Shown here one piece after another: positions 40,912 through 50,601 of a stretch of DNA of 64,000 nucleotides. Origin of the DNA: Obrimoposthia wandeli (Eukaryota). Both the position numbers and the translations under genes were made by a program. The notes beneath the pieces were generated by a model that worked only from the letters and a program-made list of their open reading frames with translations, was not told where the DNA came from and made no database searches. The stretch is from assembly GCA_977020255.1 (NCBI GenBank), contig CDROCS010000506.1:124001-188000 (forward strand), in the 5' to 3' direction. The stretch's first letter is position 1. Each line of letters begins with the position of its first letter.

Positions 40912-41331
40912 TTAACGGCATTTTTCGTAACAAGATTGCTGTTGTTTATCCATTGCTTTGAGTACATCACGACGTGAAATAATCCCAACTACCACGCCAT
41001 GCTCGTCAATCACAGGGTAGCTCTTGGGTTTTGCTGATACCATTTTCTGTGCTAATTCAATAATACTGTCTTCAGATCTGGCGGTGAGCACATCAGATCT
41101 CATCAAGTCACCGACAATCGCGACCTCTTCGCAGTAATAACTCGACTCCAATAACGTTGCTAAGCAATCTTGTTCGGAAACCCATCCCACAAGCGCATCA
41201 TTATCATCCACCACAGGAGCACCAATATGAGTCGATTTTAACAGCTTATCGACAGCCGTCGCGACAGGCATATCTACAGTTAACTTAACTGGCCGTAACT
41301 GCATATAATCAGATACTTTTAAAGAATTCAT
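40912..41331 (-). CDS. CBS-domain protein
   Basis: VSDYM, GAPVVD, GWVSEQD, YPVID and GIISRRDVL tandem CBS pair. Confidence 0.9.
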   Translation of the reverse strand: MNSLKVSDYMQLRPVKLTVDMPVATAVDKLLKSTHIGAPVVDDNDALVGWVSEQDCLATLLESSYYCEEVAIVGDLMRSDVLTARSEDSIIELAQKMVSAKPKSYPVIDEHGVVVGIISRRDVLKAMDKQQQSCYEKCR

Positions 41332-41727
41332 TCCCTTACCCCTTTAATATGTTAACCAATTGAAATAATGCATGGCTATTACTTAACCTAAGCATAGGTT
41401 ATATGGATATTTCTACCATCAAGACCTTAAAATGGCTGAAATTACTTTATTTACAACATTGATAAGCAGTAAAGCAAAAAAAACTAACATATTGTAAAAA
41501 ATAAATAACCCCAAAAAAAGCAAAACATGCGACATCTCAAACTACTTTTTAACGTAATATCGATATTTAAAACCAATAAAATGCCATTTTCTGAAGTTAT
41601 AGGAAAGTTGGCAATTGTAATTACAACTTTTTATGAAATTATGTTCTTGAAGAAGGTCACACTATTGTCATAGTATCGAGGGATAAGAAATATTAATATC
41701 TCGCTTGATGAGAAGGGAAGCAAAGCA

Positions 41728-43128
41728 ATGAAAAAAACAATGTATGAAAAGATTTGGGATTCTCACTTAGTTCATGAACCAGAGAATGGAACTCCAATAC
41801 TTTATATCGATCGTCATTTGATGCATGAAGTAACAAGTCCTCAAGCGTTTGAAGGTTTAAAGATTCAACAACGTCCAGTACGTAACAAGCACAGTATCCT
41901 AGCAACAATGGATCACTGCGTACCAACGGTTGACCGCCACTTACCAATTAAAGATCCAATTGCCGCAAAACAGATCCAAACAATGGCGGATAACTGTGAA
42001 GAACACGACCTATTAATTTACGATATGGAGAATGCTAACAACGGTGTTATTCATATTGTGGTACCTGAACATGGTTTTATCCACCCAGGTATGACTGCTG
42101 TATGTGGTGATTCTCACACAGCAACACACGGTGCATTTGGTGCGTTAGCATTCGGTATCGGTACGTCTGAAGTTGAACATGTAATGGCAACGCAAACGTT
42201 ACAACAGAAAAAATCTAAAACGATGCTAGTAAGCGTTGAAGGTAAACTGTCTCGGTTTTCTACTGCTAAAGACATTGCACTTGCTGTAATCGGTAAAATC
42301 GGTACAGCAGGCGGCACCGGTCATGTTATTGAATTCGCTGGTTCAGCAATCCGTGACTTAACAATGGAAGGTCGTATGACCCTTTGTAACATGGCAATTG
42401 AAGGTGGCGCTCGTGCAGGTTTAATCGCACCAGATCAGACTACTTTCGATTACATTGAAGGCAAAGAATTTGCGCCTAAAGGCGATCACTGGGCTGCTGC
42501 ACTAGCATACTGGAAGTCGTTACCAACAGATGATGGCGCTAAATTCGATACGATTGTTGAATTAGTCGCAGAAGATATTGCACCACAAGTAACGTGGGGT
42601 ACATCACCAGAGCAAGTTTCACCAGTAACAGCAAACGTTCCGTCTCCAACAGATTTTGATGACGTCATAAAATCGTCTGCATGTAAAGGCGCATTGTCTT
42701 ACATGGGTATTACTGCTGGCGCACCAATCACCGATATTAAAATTGATTTAGTATTTGTTGGTTCTTGCACCAACGGTCGCATTGAAGATTTCCGTGCGAT
42801 TGCAGATATGACGAAAGGCAAAAAAGTAAGTGCAGCAGTACAAGCGATTGCGGTACCGGGTTCTTACCTAGTGAAAGAACAAGCGGAAAAAGAAGGTCTA
42901 GATAAGATCTTGATGGATGCAGGTTGGGAATGGCGTGAACCAGGTTGTTCAATGTGCTTAGCAATGAATGGCGATCAACTTAAGGAAGGTCAACGTAGTG
43001 CATCTACGTCAAACCGTAACTTTGAAGGTCGACAAGGTAAAGGTGGTCGTACGCACCTCGTATCTCCAGCAATGGCTGCCGCTGCAGCAATTGAAGGCCA
43101 TTTTGTTGACATCCGTAACTGGGCGTAA
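41728..43128 (+). CDS. leuC: Isopropylmalate/citramalate isomerase large subunit
   Basis: [28 protein letters not shown] and [11 protein letters not shown] motifs. Confidence 0.97.
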
Positions 43129-43159
43129 GCTTTAGCACATTAGTGATCAAGGAATTAAA

Positions 43160-43780
43160 ATGAAAGCATATAAAAATCATACTAGTGTTGCTGCATTAAT
43201 GAATCGTAGTAACGTAGATACAGATCAAATCATCCCGAAACAGTTCTTGAAAAAAGTAGAACGTACCGGCTTTGGCATTCACTTATTTCATGACTGGCGT
43301 TTTCTTGATGACGGTTCAGAAAATCCTGAATTTGAATTAAATAAACCCGCATTCAAAGGCGCTAAAATTTTAGTGGCTGGCGATAACTTTGGTTGTGGTT
43401 CATCACGTGAACATGCGCCGTGGGCGATTGAAGATTTTGGTTTCAACACCGTTATTTCAACGAGCTATGCCGACATCTTTTACTCAAACTGCTTTAAAAA
43501 CGGTATTTTACCAATCCGTGTAAGTAAAGACGAGTTAGCCGCATTAATGGCTGAGATTGAAGCGAACGAAGGTGTCGAATTTACTGTTGACCTACCAGCG
43601 CAAACAGTAACAACACCAGGCGGTATTGTTATTAACATTGAAGTTGATCCATTCCGTAAACAAAGCCTTATCGAAGGTGCTGATGATATCTCATGGACAT
43701 TAAAGCATGAAGGTAAAATCACTGAATTCGAAGCAAAAAATAAGCAACAGTTCCCATGGTTATGGACTGAAGCGAACTAA
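43160..43780 (+). CDS. leuD: Isopropylmalate/citramalate isomerase small subunit
   Basis: NVDTDQIIPKQFL and NFGCGSSREHAPW motifs. Confidence 0.97.
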   Translation: MKAYKNHTSVAALMNRSNVDTDQIIPKQFLKKVERTGFGIHLFHDWRFLDDGSENPEFELNKPAFKGAKILVAGDNFGCGSSREHAPWAIEDFGFNTVISTSYADIFYSNCFKNGILPIRVSKDELAALMAEIEANEGVEFTVDLPAQTVTTPGGIVINIEVDPFRKQSLIEGADDISWTLKHEGKITEFEAKNKQQFPWLWTEAN

Positions 43781-43923
43781 CTTTTGGTCGTGTTGTTATA
43801 GACAATACAAATGCTCTGTCATCGCTATATAATAGGCTATAACAGAGCATACCAAAAGGCAGTTTAAAGCGGGTAGCCATCTTCTATCCGCTCTTTCCCT
43901 ACAATTTGAAGCAGGTAGCAAAT

Positions 43924-45462
43924 ATGGAAATCATGCGCCCTCGAGTCCAGTTGATGGACACTACTCTTCGCGACGGAGAGCAAACCCAAGGTGTCTCCTT
44001 CACGCCCGAAGAAAAAGTCAGTATTGCCAAAGCCCTACTCCAATCACTTAATGTTGATCGCATTGAAGTTGCGTCTGCACGTGTGTCACTCGGTGAAAAA
44101 AACGCCGTATCCTCATTAATGCAATGGGCTGAACAAGAACACCTAGCTGACCGAATTGAAATATTAGGCTTTGTTGACCATACCAAAAGCGTTGACTGGA
44201 TTAAATCCAGTGGTGCTAAAGTCATTAACTTATTAACCAAAGGCAGTGAGAAACACTGTACTGAACAATTACGTAAAACCCCTGCGGCACATATTGCAGA
44301 TGTCAGAGAAACCATCCATTATGCAATGGAGCAAGGTTTAACCGTTAACATCTATCTTGAAGATTGGTCTAATGGTTATAGCGATAATCCTGACTATGTT
44401 TATCACATGATCAGTGCGCTAGCAGATTTACCTATCCAACATTATATGCTCCCCGATACGCTTGGTGTTATGTCGCCTGATGAAGTGCACACTAGCCTCT
44501 CCGATATGATGAATCGTTTCCCGCAACTGCAATTTGATTTCCATCCGCACAATGATTACGGCTTGGCAACAGCAAATGCATTAGCGGCAGCCAAAGTGGG
44601 GATTAGTGCCATCCATTGTACGGTTAACTGCTTGGGTGAACGTGCTGGTAATGCGTCACTGGCAGAAGTGGCGGTAGTATTAAAAGACAAACTCGGCATC
44701 GAATCATCAATCAACGAACAGCGTATCCATCAGATAAGCCAAATGATTGAAAACTTCTCAGGGAAAATAACCCCTGCGAATGCCCCTATCATTGGCGCTG
44801 ACGTGTTTACCCAAACGAGTGGTATCCATGCTGATGGCGATAATAAAGGCGGCTTATATCAAACGGTATTAGGTCCTGAGCGATTTGAGCGTACACGCAC
44901 CTATGCACTCGGTAAAATGAGTGGGAAAGCATCGCTAGAGAAAAACTTAGCTGACTTAAACATTGATTTAACGGCCGAGCAAAAAACCAAATTACTCGAA
45001 CGGATTGTGACACTCGGCGATCAAAAAGCCATTATCACGCCTGAAGACTTGCCTTTTATTATTGCGGACCTATTGGAAAGTAAAGACTACTCGCATATTG
45101 AACTGCTTAACTGCTCAATAACATCTGGGTTAAATGTAGATTCGACAGCCAGTATTCGTGTTCGTATTGGTGATGACATATATAAATCTGCCGGTTCTGG
45201 TAACGGTGGTTTTGATGCATTCAGTATGGCAATACAGGCGCTTATGCCAAAGGTTGGTTTTGAGTTCCCTAATTTAGAAAACTACCAAGTACGTATTCCA
45301 CCAGGCGGCAAGACCAGCGCCCTAACAGAAAGTTTCATTACTTGGGAACAAGATAACAAAACCTTCCGAACCCGTGGCGTCAGTTCAAACCAAGTATTTG
45401 CAGGGGTACAAGCAACAATGCGCATGCTCAATAAACTACTTCACGAATCCATAACAGCATAA
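43924..45462 (+). CDS. cimA: (R)-citramalate synthase, Leptospira/Bacteroidetes type (DRE-TIM plus C-terminal regulatory domain)
   Basis: DTTLRDGEQTQGVSF, EVASARVS, EILGFVD, NLLTKGS, YLEDWSNG, HADGD and VRIPPGGKT match L. interrogans CimA as recalled, rather than LeuA. ORF-track start is TTG 43906; ATG 43924 preferred. Confidence 0.8.
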   Translation: MEIMRPRVQLMDTTLRDGEQTQGVSFTPEEKVSIAKALLQSLNVDRIEVASARVSLGEKNAVSSLMQWAEQEHLADRIEILGFVDHTKSVDWIKSSGAKVINLLTKGSEKHCTEQLRKTPAAHIADVRETIHYAMEQGLTVNIYLEDWSNGYSDNPDYVYHMISALADLPIQHYMLPDTLGVMSPDEVHTSLSDMMNRFPQLQFDFHPHNDYGLATANALAAAKVGISAIHCTVNCLGERAGNASLAEVAVVLKDKLGIESSINEQRIHQISQMIENFSGKITPANAPIIGADVFTQTSGIHADGDNKGGLYQTVLGPERFERTRTYALGKMSGKASLEKNLADLNIDLTAEQKTKLLERIVTLGDQKAIITPEDLPFIIADLLESKDYSHIELLNCSITSGLNVDSTASIRVRIGDDIYKSAGSGNGGFDAFSMAIQALMPKVGFEFPNLENYQVRIPPGGKTSALTESFITWEQDNKTFRTRGVSSNQVFAGVQATMRMLNKLLHESITA

Positions 45463-45863
45463 CCATACAGCAATCCAGACTTGCGTTATTCGCATTTAAC
45501 GTAAGTCTGTCAATAAGTAGAATACTGCAATTAAGCTGTGCACATCCGCAATCTAATCTCCCGTAATATTTAATTATATTTTCGTAAGCTATACTTAACG
45601 TATATATCGCCACAGCGACAACTTGCAATATAAAGACCCGCTAAACAACTCTAGTCACATCTAACTCACTAAAAAATGACTTTTATAAATTCAAACATAA
45701 CGCATTATTTAACATTACAAGAATAATAAAATGCTTATAAAACCGCAATTTAATTGCGCAATTTTGAAATCAAAGTCTAAATTTAGAAAAGAAGTGAGAA
45801 AAACTTCAGACTTGTAGATGCCAATTCCTGCAGATGCAAGTAATTAAATTTTGGGGGTTACCT

Positions 45864-47786
45864 ATGGGTATTTTTGAACATTATCAGCAAAGATACGAAG
45901 AAAGTCGTGAAGAAGAATATACGATCCAAGAGTTTTTGAATTTATGTCGTGACGACAAAACTGTATATGCATCTGCTGCTGAAAGATTACTACACGCAAT
46001 CGGTGAGCCAGAAATGGTTGATACCGCGACTGATTCTCGCCTGAGCCGATTATTTTCAAACCGCGTTGTTGCACGCTATCCCGCGTTTAAAGATTTCTAT
46101 GGCATGGAAGACGCCATTGAACAGATCGTTGCTTACCTAAAACACTCGGCGCAAGGATTAGAAGAAAAGAAACAAATCTTGTATTTATTGGGGCCTGTTG
46201 GGGGTGGTAAATCATCTTTAGCAGAAAAACTCAAAGACCTGATGCAAAACGAATCTATTTATCGCATTAAAGGTTCACCAGTCAACGACCATCCATTTAG
46301 TCTGTTTGACGTCAATGAAGATGCTAATATTTTACGCACTGAATACGGCATTCCAACACGTTATCTTGGTCATGTGATGTCACCTTGGGCAGCGAAACGC
46401 TTAAAAGAATTTGGTGGTGATATAAGTCAGTTCAAAGTGGAAAAAGTTCGTCCATCGATTCTCCATCAGATTGCGATTGCTAAAACCGAACCTGGCGATG
46501 AAAATAACCAAGATATTTCATCGCTCGTGGGTAAGGTTGATATTCGTCAGTTAGAACATTTCTCACAAGATGATCCTGATGCATACAGTTACTCTGGCGC
46601 ACTCTGTAAAGCCAACCAAGGTGTGATGGAGTTTGTAGAGATGTTTAAAGCACCGATTAAAGTGCTCCACCCCCTACTTACCGCAACACAGGAAGGTAAC
46701 TATAACAGTACCGAAGGTCTCTCAGCCTTGCCTTTCGAAGGCATAATCCTTGCTCACTCGAATGAATCTGAGTGGCAAACATTCCGTAACAATAAAAACA
46801 ACGAAGCGTTTTTAGACCGTGTTTATATTGTTAAAGTACCCTACTGCTTACGCATCAGTGAAGAACAAGCCATTTATCGTAAATTACTGGAAAACAGTGC
46901 GCTGCATAATGCTAAATGTGCACCAGGAACACTTGATGCGCTTGCGCAATTCACCGTGCTATCACGCATTAAAGATCCTGAAAATTCATCAATCTACTCG
47001 AAAATGCGCGTTTATGATGGCGAGACCTTAAAAGATACCGACCCGAAAGCCAAGTCGTATCAAGAGTACCGTGATTATGCGGGTGTCGATGAAGGTATGT
47101 CAGGGCTATCAACCCGTTTTGCCTATAAAATTTTATCCAAAGTATTCAACTTTGATCATGTTGAAGTTGCCGCTAACCCTGTACATCTTTTCTATGTACT
47201 CGAACAACAAATTGAACGTGAGCAATTCCCTCAAGATATTGCAGACCGTTATTTAGAGTTCTTGAAAGGTTATTTGATCCCGAAATATGCTGAATTTATC
47301 GGCAAAGAAATTCAAACCGCGTATTTAGAATCTTACTCTGAATATGGTCAAAACATTTTCGACCGCTATGTCACCTATGCTGATTTCTGGATCCAAGATC
47401 AAGAGTTTCGAGATCCTGATACAGGTCAACTTTTTGATAGAGAAGCATTAAATAACGATCTGGAAAAAATTGAGAAACCAGCGGGTATCAGTAACCCGAA
47501 AGATTTCCGTAATGAAATCGTCAATTTCGTATTACGTGCCAGAGCCAATAACAGCGGTAAAAATCCAGCTTGGGTCAGTTACGAAAAACTCCGTACGGTT
47601 ATCGAGAAGAAAATGTTCTCCAACACCGAAGAGTTGTTACCCGTTATCTCATTTAACGGTAAAACATCCACCGATGAACAACAAAAACATGACAACTTTG
47701 TAGCCCGTATGATGGAAAAAGGCTATACCAAAAAACAAGTTAGACTGTTGTCAGAATGGTATTTACGTGTACGTAAATCATCATAA
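45864..47786 (+). CDS. yeaG: PrkA/YeaG AAA+ serine kinase
   Basis: [21 protein letters not shown] and [13 protein letters not shown] motifs. Confidence 0.96.
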
Positions 47787-47809
47787 TAGATTTTGTTAGG
47801 GGGTATGAG

Positions 47810-49078
47810 ATGGCACATTTTATTGATCGCAGATTAAACGGTAAGAATAAAAGTACCGTTAATCGACAACGCTTTATGCGTCGTTATAACTCACAAATAA
47901 AAAAGGCGGTATCTGATGCTGTAAACAATCGCAGTATCCAGGATATTACATCTGGAGAAAGTGTCAGTATTCCAACTCGTGACATCTCAGAACCTATGTT
48001 TCACCAAGGCAAAGGCGGTGATCGCACCATCGTTCACCCAGGTAACGATCAATTTATTACCGGCGATAAAATTAATCGCCCACCACCCGCAGGCGGTTCT
48101 GGTGCTGGCGGCGGTGAGGCCAGTGATAGTGGCGAAGGTAATGATGAATTTAATTTTCAAATATCCAAAGACGAATACCTTGATCTATTATTTGAAGATT
48201 TAGAATTACCTAATTTACAAGAAAACCAATTCAACAGTATTGTTGAAATGAAAACCCATCGCGCCGGTTATACATCTAACGGTAACCCAGGTAACATCGC
48301 GATTGTTAAATCATTACAAAATTCACTCGCAAGACGTACCGCATTATCCGGTAGTAAGAAAAGAAAAGTAAAAGCATTACAACTTGAAGTTGACGAGTTA
48401 ACCCAGCGCGGCGACGTTGAAGGCCAATTTGTCGACGAACTCAACAAAGAAATTGCAGAGCTTAAAAAGCGCATCAGTAAAGTACCTTTCATTGATACCT
48501 TTGATTTACGCTATAACAATTTTGAGCAATACGCAGTACCCAATAGCCAAGCGGTGATGTTTTGTTTGATGGATGTATCAGGTTCAATGGATCAACCGAC
48601 TAAAGACATGGCGAAACGATTCTACATTTTACTCTATTTGTTTTTAACCCGAACTTACAAAAAAATTGAAGTGGTTTACATACGTCACCATACACAAGCA
48701 AAAGAAGTTGATGAGCATGAGTTTTTTTACTCGCAAGAGACCGGTGGTACGATTGTATCGTCAGCCTTAAAACTCATGGATAAAATTGTCACTGATAAAT
48801 TCCCAGCCAATGAGTGGAATATTTATGCAGCACAAGCTTCTGATGGAGATAACTGGGCTGATGACTCGCCTTTATGTCGCAAGATATTAGTGGATAAGAT
48901 CATGCCCAGAGTGCGTTATTTCAGCTATATAGAAATAACCAATCGAGCACATCAGACATTATGGCGTGAATATGAAAAAGTAGCAGAAGACTACTCACAG
49001 TTCGCCTTGCAACACATTCGTCAGCTCGAAGATATTTATCCTGTATTCCGTGAACTATTCAAGAAACAGGCCGCTTAG
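47810..49078 (+). CDS. yeaH: YeaH (UPF0229, vWA-like)
   Basis: [29 protein letters not shown] and ASDGDNW motifs. Confidence 0.95.
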
Positions 49079-49089
49079 GGAGAGTCTAT

Positions 49090-50601
49090 ATGTTAAAAGA
49101 TGAAGTAAAGCAGCTTAGCGATGGTCCTGATTGGAACTTCCCATTACTTGAGGAATATCATGTCGAAATAAAACGTATTGCCGAGTACTACCGACTTGAT
49201 ACTTATCCCAATCAAATAGAAGTGATCACCGCAGAGCAAATGATGGATGCTTATTCTTCAGTAGGGATGCCGATTGGCTATAACCACTGGAGCTTTGGTA
49301 AGAAATTCATTCAAACCGAGCAAAGCTACAAACGCGGGCAAATGGGACTGGCGTATGAAATTGTGATTAATTCTAGCCCTTGCATTGCCTACTTAATGGA
49401 AGAAAATACCATCCCGATGCAAGCGTTAGTGATCGCACATGCCTGTTATGGTCATAACTCTTTTTTTAAAGGCAATTATCTGTTTAAGTCTTGGACTGAC
49501 GCTGAATCAATTATAGATTATTTACTATTTTCCAAAAACTATATTGCCGAGTGCGAACAAAAATACGGTATTGATGCTGTCGAAAATATTGTCGATTCAT
49601 GCCATGCATTAATGAGCTATGGTGTTGACCGTTATAAGCGGCCAAGTGAGCCGTCATTAAGTGAAGAGAAACGTCGTCAACAAGAACGTACTGATTATTT
49701 ACAGACCCAAGTAAATGAACTGTGGCGCACCCTGCCCCAAAGTAATGAAAAAGCAGAACCTGTTGAACCTAATTTCCCAGCAGAACCACAAGAAAATATG
49801 CTGTATTTTGTAGAGAAAAATGCCCCTTTATTACAATCTTGGCAGCGTGAAATAATTCGTATCGTGCGTAAGATAAGTCAGTATTTTTATCCACAAAAAC
49901 AAACTCAAGTGATGAATGAAGGCTGGGCAACATTTTGGCATTATACCATTACCAATCACCTGTATGACGAAGGTTTAGTCTCCGATAATTTTATGTTAGA
50001 GATATTACATAATCATACTAATGTTGTTGCGCAACCAGCGTATAACAGCCCTTACTACTCAGGTATGAACCCTTACGCGCTGGGGTTTGCGATGTTTACT
50101 GATATTCGTCGCATCTGTGAACACCCGACAGCTGAAGATAAAGCCTGGTTCCCTGATATTGCCGGCAGTGATTGGTTAGACACATTGCATTTTGCCATGC
50201 AGAACTTTAAAGATGAAAGCTTCATTAGCCAATATTTATCGCCAAAAGTAATGCGTGATATGCACTTATTTTCAATCGAGGATAATGACAGCAGTAAATA
50301 TATTGAAGTATCAGCAATTCATAATGAAGAAGGCTACCAACAACTGCGTAGTAAGTTATCTGCCCAATATAATTTAAGTAACAATGAACCTAACATTCAG
50401 GTATTTAATGTTGATAGAAAGGGTGATCGTTCTTTAACACTACGTTATGTGCCGCATCAAGATATACCGCTGGAGGGTAAATCTGCACAAGAAGTAATGA
50501 AACATCTACATCGATTATGGGGCTTTGATGTTAAGTTAGAACAAGTTCAAGCCAATGGTAATATTGAACTGCTCTGTCAAAGTATAACGCCTACGCCTTA
50601 A
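49090..50601 (+). CDS. ycgB: SpoVR/YcgB family protein
   Basis: GLAYEIVINS, HACYGHNSFF and MNEGWA motifs. Confidence 0.95.
   Translation: MLKDEVKQLSDGPDWNFPLLEEYHVEIKRIAEYYRLDTYPNQIEVITAEQMMDAYSSVGMPIGYNHWSFGKKFIQTEQSYKRGQMGLAYEIVINSSPCIAYLMEENTIPMQALVIAHACYGHNSFFKGNYLFKSWTDAESIIDYLLFSKNYIAECEQKYGIDAVENIVDSCHALMSYGVDRYKRPSEPSLSEEKRRQQERTDYLQTQVNELWRTLPQSNEKAEPVEPNFPAEPQENMLYFVEKNAPLLQSWQREIIRIVRKISQYFYPQKQTQVMNEGWATFWHYTITNHLYDEGLVSDNFMLEILHNHTNVVAQPAYNSPYYSGMNPYALGFAMFTDIRRICEHPTAEDKAWFPDIAGSDWLDTLHFAMQNFKDESFISQYLSPKVMRDMHLFSIEDNDSSKYIEVSAIHNEEGYQQLRSKLSAQYNLSNNEPNIQVFNVDRKGDRSLTLRYVPHQDIPLEGKSAQEVMKHLHRLWGFDVKLEQVQANGNIELLCQSITPTP

What the first reader, a model, noticed from the sequence alone, without database searches (positions are those of the whole stretch)
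41728..45462. leuC-leuD-cimA: candidate dedicated citramalate (threonine-independent isoleucine) pathway cluster
The third gene follows Leptospira-type CimA along its length (ASARVS, EILGFVD, NLLTKGS, YLEDWSNG, PDTLG, HADGD, VRIPPGGKT), including the Leu/Leu/Tyr residues I recall as shaping the pyruvate-selective pocket, rather than gammaproteobacterial LeuA. It is clustered with its own LeuC/LeuD isomerase but no leuA/leuB, unlike the canonical leuABCD order. Established chemistry: pyruvate + acetyl-CoA -> citramalate -> (LeuCD) methylmalate -> (LeuB) 2-oxobutyrate -> Ile. This route is known from spirochaetes, Bacteroidetes, Geobacter and archaea and seems unusual for this lineage. The inference is a horizontally acquired module with specialised LeuCD paralogues.
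Basis: partly seen in the sequence, partly recalled or inferred. Interest (0 to 1): 0.72.

Follow-up and report, generated by a model that had tools for sequence, protein, structure and literature searches.

The report
Moritella leuC-leuD-cimA isoleucine operon
This Moritella bacterium has a three-gene operon that most likely makes the isoleucine precursor from pyruvate instead of threonine; the route is known, the operon is widespread in related marine bacteria and methane-oxidisers, and it is ordinary rather than a recent foreign import.

Summary

The third protein is a Leptospira-type (R)-citramalate synthase. It aligns without gaps to the solved LiCMS catalytic domain (about 53% identity) and keeps Leu81, Leu104 and Tyr144. 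It scores twice as high on the CimA model as on any LeuA model.

- **Not unusual:** the same gene order is in four of four Moritella loci at one chromosomal site, and in Psychromonas, Motilimonas, Agarivorans, Alginatibacterium and most Methylococcales (69 of 80 loci).
- **Not a recent transfer:** the CimA and LeuC trees agree.
- **Probably not dedicated paralogues:** published tables list one leuCD pair per methanotroph, often beside cimA. The stored two thirds of the Psychromonas ingrahamii table lists one pair.

So these LeuCD are more likely the cell's only isomerase, shared by the leucine and isoleucine routes. I could not check Moritella itself for leuA, leuB, ilvA or a second leuCD.

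The scan noted the same kind of cluster before on another piece of this assembly (s1-241286). Verdict: new member of a known kind, low interest.

The parts
41618..41727 (+). Promoter and 5' leader region of the operon. A sigma-70-like match has TTGTCA at 41665, an 18-nt spacer and AATATT ending at 41694.
   Evidence: The last ~110 nt before leuC are nearly invariant in four Moritella genomes, while the stretch further upstream is variable (alignment A1). A metatranscriptome contig begins at about 41709-41712. There is no Rfam match and no conserved leader peptide.
41728..43128 (+). leuC, large subunit of 3-isopropylmalate/citramalate isomerase (aconitase family)
   Evidence: TIGR00170 scores 750 bits (cutoff 560) and Pfam Aconitase 575 bits. 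It is 63% identical to E. coli LeuC and 75-79% identical to the cimA-linked LeuC of Motilimonas, Psychromonas and Methylococcales.
43160..43780 (+). leuD, small subunit of the isomerase
   Evidence: TIGR00171 scores 267 bits (cutoff 116) and Pfam Aconitase_C matches. It is 52% identical to E. coli LeuD.
43781..43923 (+). leuD-cimA spacer with two strong hairpins (43781-43858 and 43868-43892); variable between strains
   Evidence: The RNA fold is -43.7 kcal/mol with z -5.0. In related Moritella sequences this spacer is shortened or replaced (joints 43773-43903 and 43785-43866).
43924..45462 (+). cimA, Leptospira-type (R)-citramalate synthase, 512 aa, with a C-terminal LeuA-dimer regulatory domain
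   Evidence: NF042433 scores 644 bits against 323 for the best LeuA model. It aligns without gaps to PDB 3BLE (LiCMS) at 380 bits and to 3F6G (the regulatory domain) at 86-90 bits. Catalytic and pocket residues are invariant in 70 orthologues. It is 27% identical to E. coli LeuA.
45476..45509 (+). 13-bp stem-loop 14 nt after the cimA stop, probably a 3'-end or terminator hairpin without a clear U tract
   Evidence: The RNA fold is -21.4 kcal/mol with z -6.3; 0 of 200 shuffles fold as well. The simple terminator scan did not list it because there is no T run.

Best explanation
leuC-leuD-cimA is a chromosomal, genus-wide biosynthetic operon of Moritella.

Proposed mechanism:
1. CimA condenses pyruvate with acetyl-CoA to give (R)-citramalate.
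2. LeuCD isomerises citramalate, via citraconate, to 3-methylmalate.
3. A LeuB encoded elsewhere oxidises and decarboxylates 3-methylmalate to 2-oxobutyrate.
4. 2-Oxobutyrate enters the common ilv enzymes to give isoleucine.
5. The C-terminal domain of CimA most likely binds isoleucine for feedback inhibition.

The LeuCD here is most likely also the cell's general 2-isopropylmalate isomerase, shared with leucine synthesis, and not a dedicated paralogue.

What is shown: gene identities, residue conservation, gene order, distribution, and an RNA-library contig that covers exactly the three genes.

What is inferred: substrate preference, isoleucine feedback, sharing of LeuCD, and the use of a distant LeuB.
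For: **CimA identity**
- Its best family is the Leptospira CimA equivalog, at 644 bits against no more than 323 for LeuA models.
- It aligns without gaps over 321 residues to the solved LiCMS catalytic domain. By my count of that alignment, 170 of 321 positions are identical.
- Arg16, Asp17, Glu146, Thr179, His207, His209, His302 and Asp304 are kept, as are the pocket residues Leu81, Leu104 and Tyr144. All are invariant in 70 orthologues. E. coli LeuA has Val, Phe and Ser at the three pocket positions.

**Regulatory domain**
- It matches the LiCMS regulatory domain 3F6G. Six of the nine residues I recall as isoleucine-site residues are identical and one more is conservative.

**Operon**
- The gaps between genes are 31 nt and 143 nt.
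- One 3,819-nt contig from a metatranscriptome starts 16 nt before the leuC ATG and ends about 125 nt after the cimA stop.
- A strong hairpin follows cimA.

**Conservation**
- The order leuC-leuD-cimA is found in 69 of 80 related loci, in Psychromonas and in Moritella sp. 5.
- The flanks are identical in all four Moritella loci.

**Shared LeuCD**
- Both subunits pass the equivalog cutoffs.
- S3 Table of PMC10602362 lists one leuD/C pair per gammaproteobacterial methanotroph. In Methylobacter tundripaludum, M. oryzae and Methylomonas lenta that pair is the one beside citM.
- The stored part of the Psychromonas ingrahamii gene table shows solitary leuA and leuB and only the rnd-adjacent leuCD pair (with the synteny).
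- Bacteroides has leuA-leuC-leuD-cimA-leuB in one operon.
- From established knowledge, E. coli LeuBCD, the Leptospira enzymes and the M. jannaschii enzymes all process citramalate-pathway intermediates. No specialised isomerase is therefore required.
Against: - No enzyme data exist for this clade.
- The score is below the curated cutoff of the CimA equivalog (644 against 950).
- LeuB, LeuA and IlvA of Moritella were not found or excluded. Moritella was not among the best 120 hits of the cimA-associated LeuB family.
- Window LeuC is nearer to Methylococcales LeuC (77%) than to E. coli LeuC (63%). This leaves room for an old transfer and for a second, enteric-type leuABCD elsewhere in the genome.
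Its organism is unknown.
- Two of the recalled isoleucine-site residues differ: Val468 is Thr and Pro493 is Ser.
- The RNA evidence is an assembled contig, which cannot prove a single transcript.
Confidence: 0.7

Rival explanations
1. The cluster is a horizontally acquired, self-contained citramalate module whose LeuCD are specialised paralogues, working beside a canonical leuABCD operon and IlvA elsewhere in the Moritella genome.
For: - Window LeuC and LeuD are only 63% and 52% identical to the E. coli proteins but 75-79% identical to cimA-linked LeuC of distant orders.
- The three genes sit in different chromosomal contexts in different genera.
- A 'SAR324' MAG carries the cluster too.
- Some Methylomonas have two LeuB, one of them beside citM.
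- ilvA, and a leuC beside a LysR gene, were noted on other pieces of this mixed assembly.
Against: - The cluster lies at one fixed site with identical flanks in all four Moritella loci, and its GC content is not anomalous.
- The CimA and LeuC trees are congruent. Methylococcales are one clade and Moritella lies outside it, so there is no recent donor.
- Published tables list a single leuCD pair where cimA is adjacent. P. ingrahamii shows no second pair in the stored two thirds of its gene list.
- LeuC and LeuD pass the equivalog cutoffs.
- Ordinary LeuCD already handles citramalate (established knowledge).
Confidence: 0.2
2. The third gene is a divergent 2-isopropylmalate synthase (LeuA), as several RefSeq records name it, and the cluster is simply a rearranged leucine operon.
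For: NCBI names several orthologues '2-isopropylmalate synthase'. The domain architecture is that of LeuA. The score is below the curated CimA cutoff.
Against: - It is 27% identical to E. coli LeuA but about 53% identical to LiCMS.
- The CimA model scores twice as high as any LeuA model.
- The pocket residues are Leu, Leu and Tyr as in LiCMS, where E. coli LeuA has Val, Phe and Ser.
- P. ingrahamii and Bacteroides carry a separate LeuA as well.
Confidence: 0.04
3. The enzyme is a citramalate synthase, but its main role is not isoleucine supply. It might instead make 2-oxobutyrate or propionyl-CoA for other products, or serve as a carbon or redox overflow route in cold or high-pressure growth.
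For: The hosts are psychrophiles, piezophiles and methanotrophs. Transcripts are present, with large summed contig depth, in one marine metatranscriptome (X19). A separate ilvA may exist.
Against: The amino-acid-binding regulatory domain is kept, with most of the recalled isoleucine-site residues. The gene is linked only to leu genes in all lineages. Nothing in the neighbourhood points to another product.
Confidence: 0.06

Closest known systems
Leptospira interrogans citramalate synthase LiCMS/CimA (PDB 3BLE/3BLF/3BLI catalytic domain; 3F6G/3F6H regulatory domain; NCBIfam NF042433)
   Same: The three-part architecture is the same. The alignment over residues 5-325 has no gaps and uses identical numbering, with about 53% identity. 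All catalytic residues and the Leu81/Leu104/Tyr144 pocket are kept. The regulatory domain is about 42% identical, with the Asp431, Leu451, Tyr454, Ile458, Thr464 and Gln495 equivalents kept.
   Different: The score is below the equivalog cutoff (644 against 950). Tyr430 is Phe, Val468 is Thr and Pro493 is Ser in the effector site. The host is a gammaproteobacterium, and here the gene is fused into an operon with leuCD. No biochemistry exists for this clade.
Bacteroides leu operon leuA-leuC-leuD-cimA-leuB (seen here in a B. finegoldii record)
   Same: The core order leuC-leuD-cimA is the same, and the CimA is of the same Leptospira type at 49% identity.
   Different: Moritella lacks leuA and leuB at the locus. 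Its LeuC and LeuD are proteobacterial: 63% and 52% identical to E. coli against 52% and 46% to Bacteroides.
citM/cimA of gammaproteobacterial methanotrophs (for example MALCv4_1503 of Methylotuvimicrobium alcaliphilum 20Z), described as the threonine-independent isoleucine route in PMC10602362
   Same: It belongs to the same orthologous group (63-68% identity), and most Methylococcales loci fetched have the same leuC-leuD-cimA order.
   Different: In methanotrophs the linkage varies. cimA lies beside leuCD, beside a distinctive leuB, or beside both. Moritella has only leuCD beside it, at a Moritella-specific site.
Geobacter sulfurreducens / cyanobacterial type CimA (TIGR00977) and Methanocaldococcus jannaschii CimA
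   Same: The reaction and pathway role are the same (established knowledge).
   Different: These are different clades of the LeuA/HMGL superfamily. TIGR00977 scores only 165 bits here.
Canonical enterobacterial leuABCD operon with its leuL attenuator
   Same: LeuC and LeuD are orthologous in function and pass the same equivalog models.
   Different: There is no leuA, leuB or leader peptide here, and cimA occupies the third position.

Membership tests
Leptospira-type (R)-citramalate synthase (LiCMS clade) | HMGL-like TIM-barrel catalytic domain, followed by a linker subdomain and a C-terminal LeuA-dimer regulatory domain | tested here: met
   Pfam PF00682 covers residues 13-281, PF22617 covers 295-374 and PF08502 covers 377-512 of the 518-aa ORF.
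Leptospira-type (R)-citramalate synthase (LiCMS clade) | Closer to characterised CimA than to any LeuA, homocitrate synthase or Geobacter-type CimA | tested here: met
   NF042433 scores 644 bits, the best LeuA model 323, NifV 256 and TIGR00977 165. In the PDB search, 3BLE scores 380 bits against 171 for the next chain, a homocitrate synthase.
Leptospira-type (R)-citramalate synthase (LiCMS clade) | Reaches NCBIfam's curated equivalog cutoff for CimA (950 bits) | tested here: not met
   The score is 644 bits. The cutoff marks the narrow trusted range of a Leptospira-centred model; it is not a chemical feature. It does mean that automatic naming does not call this protein CimA.
Leptospira-type (R)-citramalate synthase (LiCMS clade) | Catalytic and metal-binding residues Arg16, Asp17, Glu146, Thr179, His207, His209, His302 and Asp304 | tested here: met
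   All are present, and all are invariant in 70 orthologues. The roles of these residues come from my recollection of Ma et al. 2008; the paper was not retrievable. The loss of activity on mutating a histidine of the HxH[DN]D motif is mentioned in PMC7826400.
Leptospira-type (R)-citramalate synthase (LiCMS clade) | Small hydrophobic pocket Leu81/Leu104/Tyr144 that selects pyruvate | tested here: met
   Leu, Leu and Tyr occur in the window protein and in all 70 orthologues; E. coli LeuA has Val, Phe and Ser. The assignment of the pocket is from memory; no paper in the library holds these residue names.
Leptospira-type (R)-citramalate synthase (LiCMS clade) | Pyruvate-specific activity and isoleucine feedback inhibition | not testable with these tools
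   This needs an enzyme assay. Sequence only: the effector-site equivalents read F D L Y I T T S Q where LiCMS has Y D L Y I T V P Q.
Complete citramalate (pyruvate) pathway to 2-oxobutyrate | CimA, LeuC/LeuD and LeuB all present in the organism | tested here: inconclusive
   CimA and LeuCD are present. No LeuB lies in the 64-kb window, and Moritella was not among the best 120 hits of two LeuB word searches. The rest of the genome could not be scanned.
Indirect evidence points the other way: one pair per genome in the methanotroph table and in the stored part of the P. ingrahamii table.
Canonical leuABCD operon | leuA and leuB adjacent to leuCD, with a Leu-rich leader peptide | tested here: not met
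   tblastn with E. coli LeuA and LeuB finds only cimA (27% identity) and no leuB in the window. There is no conserved leader ORF.

The most novel reading that the evidence does not exclude
In Moritella, Psychromonas and their relatives, as in many Methylococcales, the only LeuCD of the cell is transcribed together with CimA. The pyruvate route would then be the main or sole source of 2-oxobutyrate, with no biosynthetic IlvA. A distinctive, highly conserved LeuB family (75-80% identical across orders, and adjacent to cimA in several genomes) would be the matching dehydrogenase. That would define a gammaproteobacteria-wide, operon-level coupling of leucine and isoleucine synthesis that has not been described.
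Probability: 0.25. Interest if true: 0.35.

Novelty: new member of a known kind. Interest (0 to 1): 0.2.

Why it matters
The main value is for annotation and physiology.
- RefSeq names these proteins inconsistently: '2-isopropylmalate synthase', 'alpha-isopropylmalate synthase regulatory domain-containing protein' and, rarely, '(R)-citramalate synthase'. Metabolic reconstructions of Moritella (which includes fish pathogens and deep-sea piezophiles), Psychromonas and many methanotrophs may therefore miss the pyruvate route to isoleucine, or wrongly count a second LeuA.
- If LeuCD is shared, the operon ties leucine and isoleucine synthesis to one promoter. That bears on auxotrophy predictions and on 13C flux models.
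- It does not open a new kind of biology.

Tried and rejected
1. **Attenuator or riboswitch before leuC.** Rfam gave nothing. Small ORFs upstream are not conserved among four Moritella genomes. A scan of 83 loci for Ile/Leu/Val/Thr-rich leader peptides gave only scattered chance hits. The best was 'MLLLLLLASITMRA' in Alginatibacterium, which has no terminator after it and no counterpart in Agarivorans.
2. **A conserved regulator next to the cluster.** The upstream genes differ between lineages: a CBS pair in Moritella, rnd in Psychromonas, DUF1415 in Motilimonas, and others elsewhere. None is a LysR gene.
3. **Recent transfer from methanotrophs.** Rejected by the trees.
4. **Plasmid carriage.** The only plasmid-labelled hits above 40% identity are Bacteroidota records at 47-50%.
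5. **Finding Moritella's own leuA, leuB, ilvA or a second leuCD.** All of these attempts failed or were uninformative:
   - the single genome-contig scan;
   - two LeuB word searches;
   - papers and supplements on Moritella yayanosii and Motilimonas;
   - earlier notes of this scan.
6. **The two LiCMS structure papers.** They could not be read, so the residue roles are from memory. The residue types I recalled match the PDB sequences at every position checked.
7. **The large HMMER search and structure prediction.** Not used. The protein is not open after the family, PDB and word searches.
Full report
**What is there**

The window is bacterial DNA of the genus Moritella. The third protein of the cluster is 99% identical to proteins of M. 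dasanensis, and the locus is 99% identical to M. dasanensis ArB 0140 (L001). Earlier notes of this scan show that the assembly is a mixture of an invertebrate and several bacteria. They also show that this window lies on a multi-megabase Moritella piece.

Three ORFs lie head to tail on the + strand:
- 41728-43128;
- 43160-43780;
- 43906-45462, with an in-frame ATG at 43924, which is the more likely start.

The gaps between them are 31 nt and 143 nt.

NCBIfam and Pfam identify the three proteins:
- **LeuC:** TIGR00170 scores 750 bits against a cutoff of 560.
- **LeuD:** TIGR00171 scores 267 bits against a cutoff of 116.
- **Third protein:** it has the LeuA-type architecture of HMGL-like, HCS_D2 and LeuA_dimer domains. 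Its best model by a factor of two is the Leptospira (R)-citramalate synthase equivalog NF042433, at 644 bits. The best LeuA model scores 323 bits and the Geobacter-type CimA model scores 165 bits.

The flanking genes are unrelated to amino-acid synthesis. On one side are hrpA, glpT and a small CBS-pair gene that is divergent from leuC. On the other side are prkA-yeaH-ycgB, fadR, nhaB and dsbB. tblastn with E. coli LeuA, LeuB and IlvA finds nothing else in the 64 kb.

**Is the third gene a citramalate synthase?**

The protein aligns without a single gap to the solved catalytic domain of Leptospira interrogans citramalate synthase (3BLE, 380 bits). Window numbering therefore equals LiCMS numbering. 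By my count of that alignment, 170 of 321 positions are identical. The next best solved chains are a homocitrate synthase (171 bits) and LeuA proteins (148 bits or less).

The following residues are all present:
- Arg16 and Asp17;
- Glu146 and Thr179;
- His207 and His209;
- His302 and Asp304;
- the three residues that I recall (Ma et al. 2008, not retrievable here) as forming the small pocket for the pyruvate methyl group: Leu81, Leu104 and Tyr144.

In an alignment of 70 orthologues from the fetched loci, every one of these positions is invariant. E. coli LeuA has Val, Phe and Ser at 81, 104 and 144. Identity to E. coli LeuA is 27%.

The C-terminal 120 residues match the LiCMS regulatory domain (3F6G, 90 bits). 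The nine residues that I recall as lining the isoleucine site (Zhang et al. 2009, not retrievable) are Y430, D431, L451, Y454, I458, T464, V468, P493 and Q495. My recollection is consistent with the PDB sequence at all nine. In the window protein they read F, D, L, Y, I, T, T, S and Q. Isoleucine feedback on LiCMS is stated in PMC7826400 and PMC13381585.

I conclude that the gene encodes a LiCMS-type citramalate synthase with an amino-acid effector site, most likely for isoleucine. Activity and inhibition are inferred, not shown.

**Operon structure**

- The last ~110 nt before leuC are almost invariant in four Moritella genomes, whereas the sequence further upstream is not.
- A sigma-70-like match lies at 41665-41694.
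- There is no Rfam hit and no conserved leader peptide.
- A marine metatranscriptome (run X17) holds one 3,819-nt contig of a related Moritella. It begins 16 nt before the leuC ATG, runs through leuD and cimA, and stops about 125 nt after the cimA stop. It includes none of the flanking genes. This is what a tricistronic mRNA would give. It is an assembled contig, however, and cannot prove a single molecule.
- A 13-bp hairpin (-21.4 kcal/mol, z -6.3) follows cimA.
- The leuD-cimA spacer folds into strong hairpins, but in related strains it is replaced or shortened. It is therefore unlikely to be a conserved regulatory element.

**Distribution**

A scan of one genome per species with LeuC returned 80 loci at 74% identity or more:
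- three Moritella;
- three Motilimonas;
- Agarivorans;
- Alginatibacterium;
- one 'SAR324' MAG;
- about 70 Methylococcales or methanotroph-like MAGs.

In 69 of the 80 loci a cimA orthologue (62-99% identity) follows leuD on the same strand. Most of the others end within about 3.6 kb after leuD. Psychromonas has the same trio between rnd and a DUF3010 gene.

Moritella sp. 5 (complete genome), PE36 and a sediment MAG have the trio between exactly the same neighbours as the window. No other genus shares those neighbours.

The word search found more than 30 Moritella protein clusters at 84-99% identity, then many Psychromonas at 68%. JGI names several of these 'D-citramalate synthase'. NCBI names vary.

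A methanotroph paper already describes the gene (citM, MALCv4_1503) as the first step of the threonine-independent isoleucine pathway (PMC10602362). In a Bacteroides finegoldii record the gene order is leuA-leuC-leuD-cimA-leuB, with a CimA 49% identical to the window's.

The route is therefore not unusual for this lineage, and the gene order is an old, recurrent one.

**Horizontal module with dedicated paralogues?**

Quick maximum-likelihood trees of CimA and of LeuC, rooted on E. coli LeuA and LeuC, agree with each other:
- Methylococcales form one well-supported clade in both trees.
- The same sub-groups recur in both: Agarivorans with Alginatibacterium, the three Motilimonas (with Psychromonas beside them, well supported only in the CimA tree), and Moritella.
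- Moritella lies outside the methanotroph clade.

The three genes have therefore travelled together for a long time, and there is no sign of a recent donor. GC content is unremarkable.

Some facts leave an ancient transfer possible:
- Window LeuC is nearer to Methylococcales LeuC (77%) than to E. coli LeuC (63%).
- The chromosomal context differs between genera.

I could not scan a Moritella genome for a second leuCD. The single genome scan returned only cimA-linked loci, and the word search shows only the best 120 hits.

Indirect evidence favours a single, shared isomerase:
- **Methanotroph table.** S3 Table of PMC10602362 lists paralogues where they exist (two leuB in several Methylomonas) but only one leuD/C pair for every gammaproteobacterial methanotroph. 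In Methylobacter tundripaludum, M. oryzae and Methylomonas lenta that single pair has gene numbers adjacent to citM.
- **Psychromonas ingrahamii gene table.** The stored part of the PMC2405808 supplement, about two thirds of the genome, has a solitary leuA (Ping_0224), a solitary leuB (Ping_2363) and only one leuCD (Ping_1757/1758). That pair lies next to RNase D, as the cimA-linked pair does in Psychromonas sp. MME2.
- **Family scores.** Both subunits score well above the LeuC and LeuD equivalog cutoffs.
- **Established knowledge.** Ordinary LeuCD and LeuB process the citramalate-pathway intermediates in Leptospira, Methanocaldococcus and engineered E. coli.

I therefore put about 0.7 on the shared-operon reading and about 0.2 on the dedicated-paralogue reading.

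**The dehydrogenase step**

In seven loci (Alginatibacterium and six Methylococcales) a leuB lies shortly downstream of cimA on the opposite strand. It is only 40-44% identical to E. coli LeuB and sits right at the TIGR00169 cutoff, at 353.5 bits against 353.2.

This LeuB type is strikingly conserved, at 75-89% identity, across these taxa:
- Aliagarivorans, Motilimonas, Psychromonas and Celerinatantimonas;
- Methylomonas;
- Pseudohongiella;
- Porticoccaceae MAGs.

It is solitary in Motilimonas. The methanotroph table shows it next to citM in Methylotuvimicrobium and Methylomonas. Several Methylomonas have a second leuB beside leuCD. Moritella did not appear among the best 120 hits of either search. 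That says nothing either way.

**Verdict**

This is a real and correctly recognised cimA operon, assigned by strong homology to a solved and characterised enzyme. It is conserved across a genus and found in many gammaproteobacteria, and it is already recognised in databases and in one paper on methanotrophs. It is a new member of a known kind. The same kind of cluster was already noted by this scan on another piece of the assembly (s1-241286).

Noticed in passing
L079:15873-16982 (-); L055:13696-14805 (-); also L010, L012, L021, L056, L080: A divergent leuB lies just downstream of cimA on the opposite strand in Alginatibacterium and six Methylococcales loci. It is 40-44% identical to E. coli LeuB and sits exactly at the TIGR00169 cutoff. 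The family is 75-89% conserved across several orders. In Methylomonas it coexists with a second leuB. It may be the dehydrogenase matched to the pyruvate route.
   Followed up: partly
window 40912-41331 (-): A 139-aa CBS-pair protein is transcribed divergently from leuC. The 396-nt intergenic region has two conserved blocks. This neighbour is found only in Moritella. Any link to the operon is unknown.
   Followed up: partly
window 43781-43923: The leuD-cimA spacer folds into strong hairpins (-43.7 kcal/mol, z -5), yet it is replaced by other, shorter sequence in related Moritella strains seen in RNA libraries. It may be a small repeat or insertion element rather than a regulator.
   Followed up: partly
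Psychromonas ingrahamii 37, Ping_1759 (PMC2405808 supplement): The gene slot after leuD, where cimA is expected by synteny with L084, has no protein entry in either supplementary table (row 1671 is missing and the GI numbers run on). cimA may be a pseudogene or uncalled in that strain's 2008 annotation.
   Followed up: no
L083:7852-9237: In one Psychromonas draft assembly leuC is called as two pieces (399 aa and 58 aa). In the complete genome of the same species (L084) it is intact at 465 aa. This is probably an assembly error.
   Followed up: no
L026 (NVSR01000063.1): A MAG labelled 'SAR324 cluster' carries leuC-leuD-cimA and branches among the gammaproteobacterial sequences. The cause is either a mis-binned contig or a transfer.
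   Followed up: no
Names: The same orthologous protein is named '2-isopropylmalate synthase', 'alpha-isopropylmalate synthase regulatory domain-containing protein' or '(R)-citramalate synthase' in different Moritella and Psychromonas records. The strict 950-bit cutoff of NF042433 leaves this clade without a specific name.
   Followed up: partly
window 41300-45900, sequencing runs: Near-identical DNA occurs in food metagenomes and ice metagenomes from several studies, which fits a cold-loving, seafood-associated Moritella. One marine metatranscriptome (X19) has large summed contig depth over leuC and leuD.
   Followed up: no
window 45834-50601: prkA-yeaH-ycgB (PrkA kinase, DUF444, SpoVR-like) follows the operon as a conserved trio, then fadR, nhaB and dsbB as in enteric bacteria.
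   Followed up: no
L058:9191-9801: leuD is split into two reading frames in one Methylobacter MAG, which indicates a frameshift or an assembly error.
   Followed up: no
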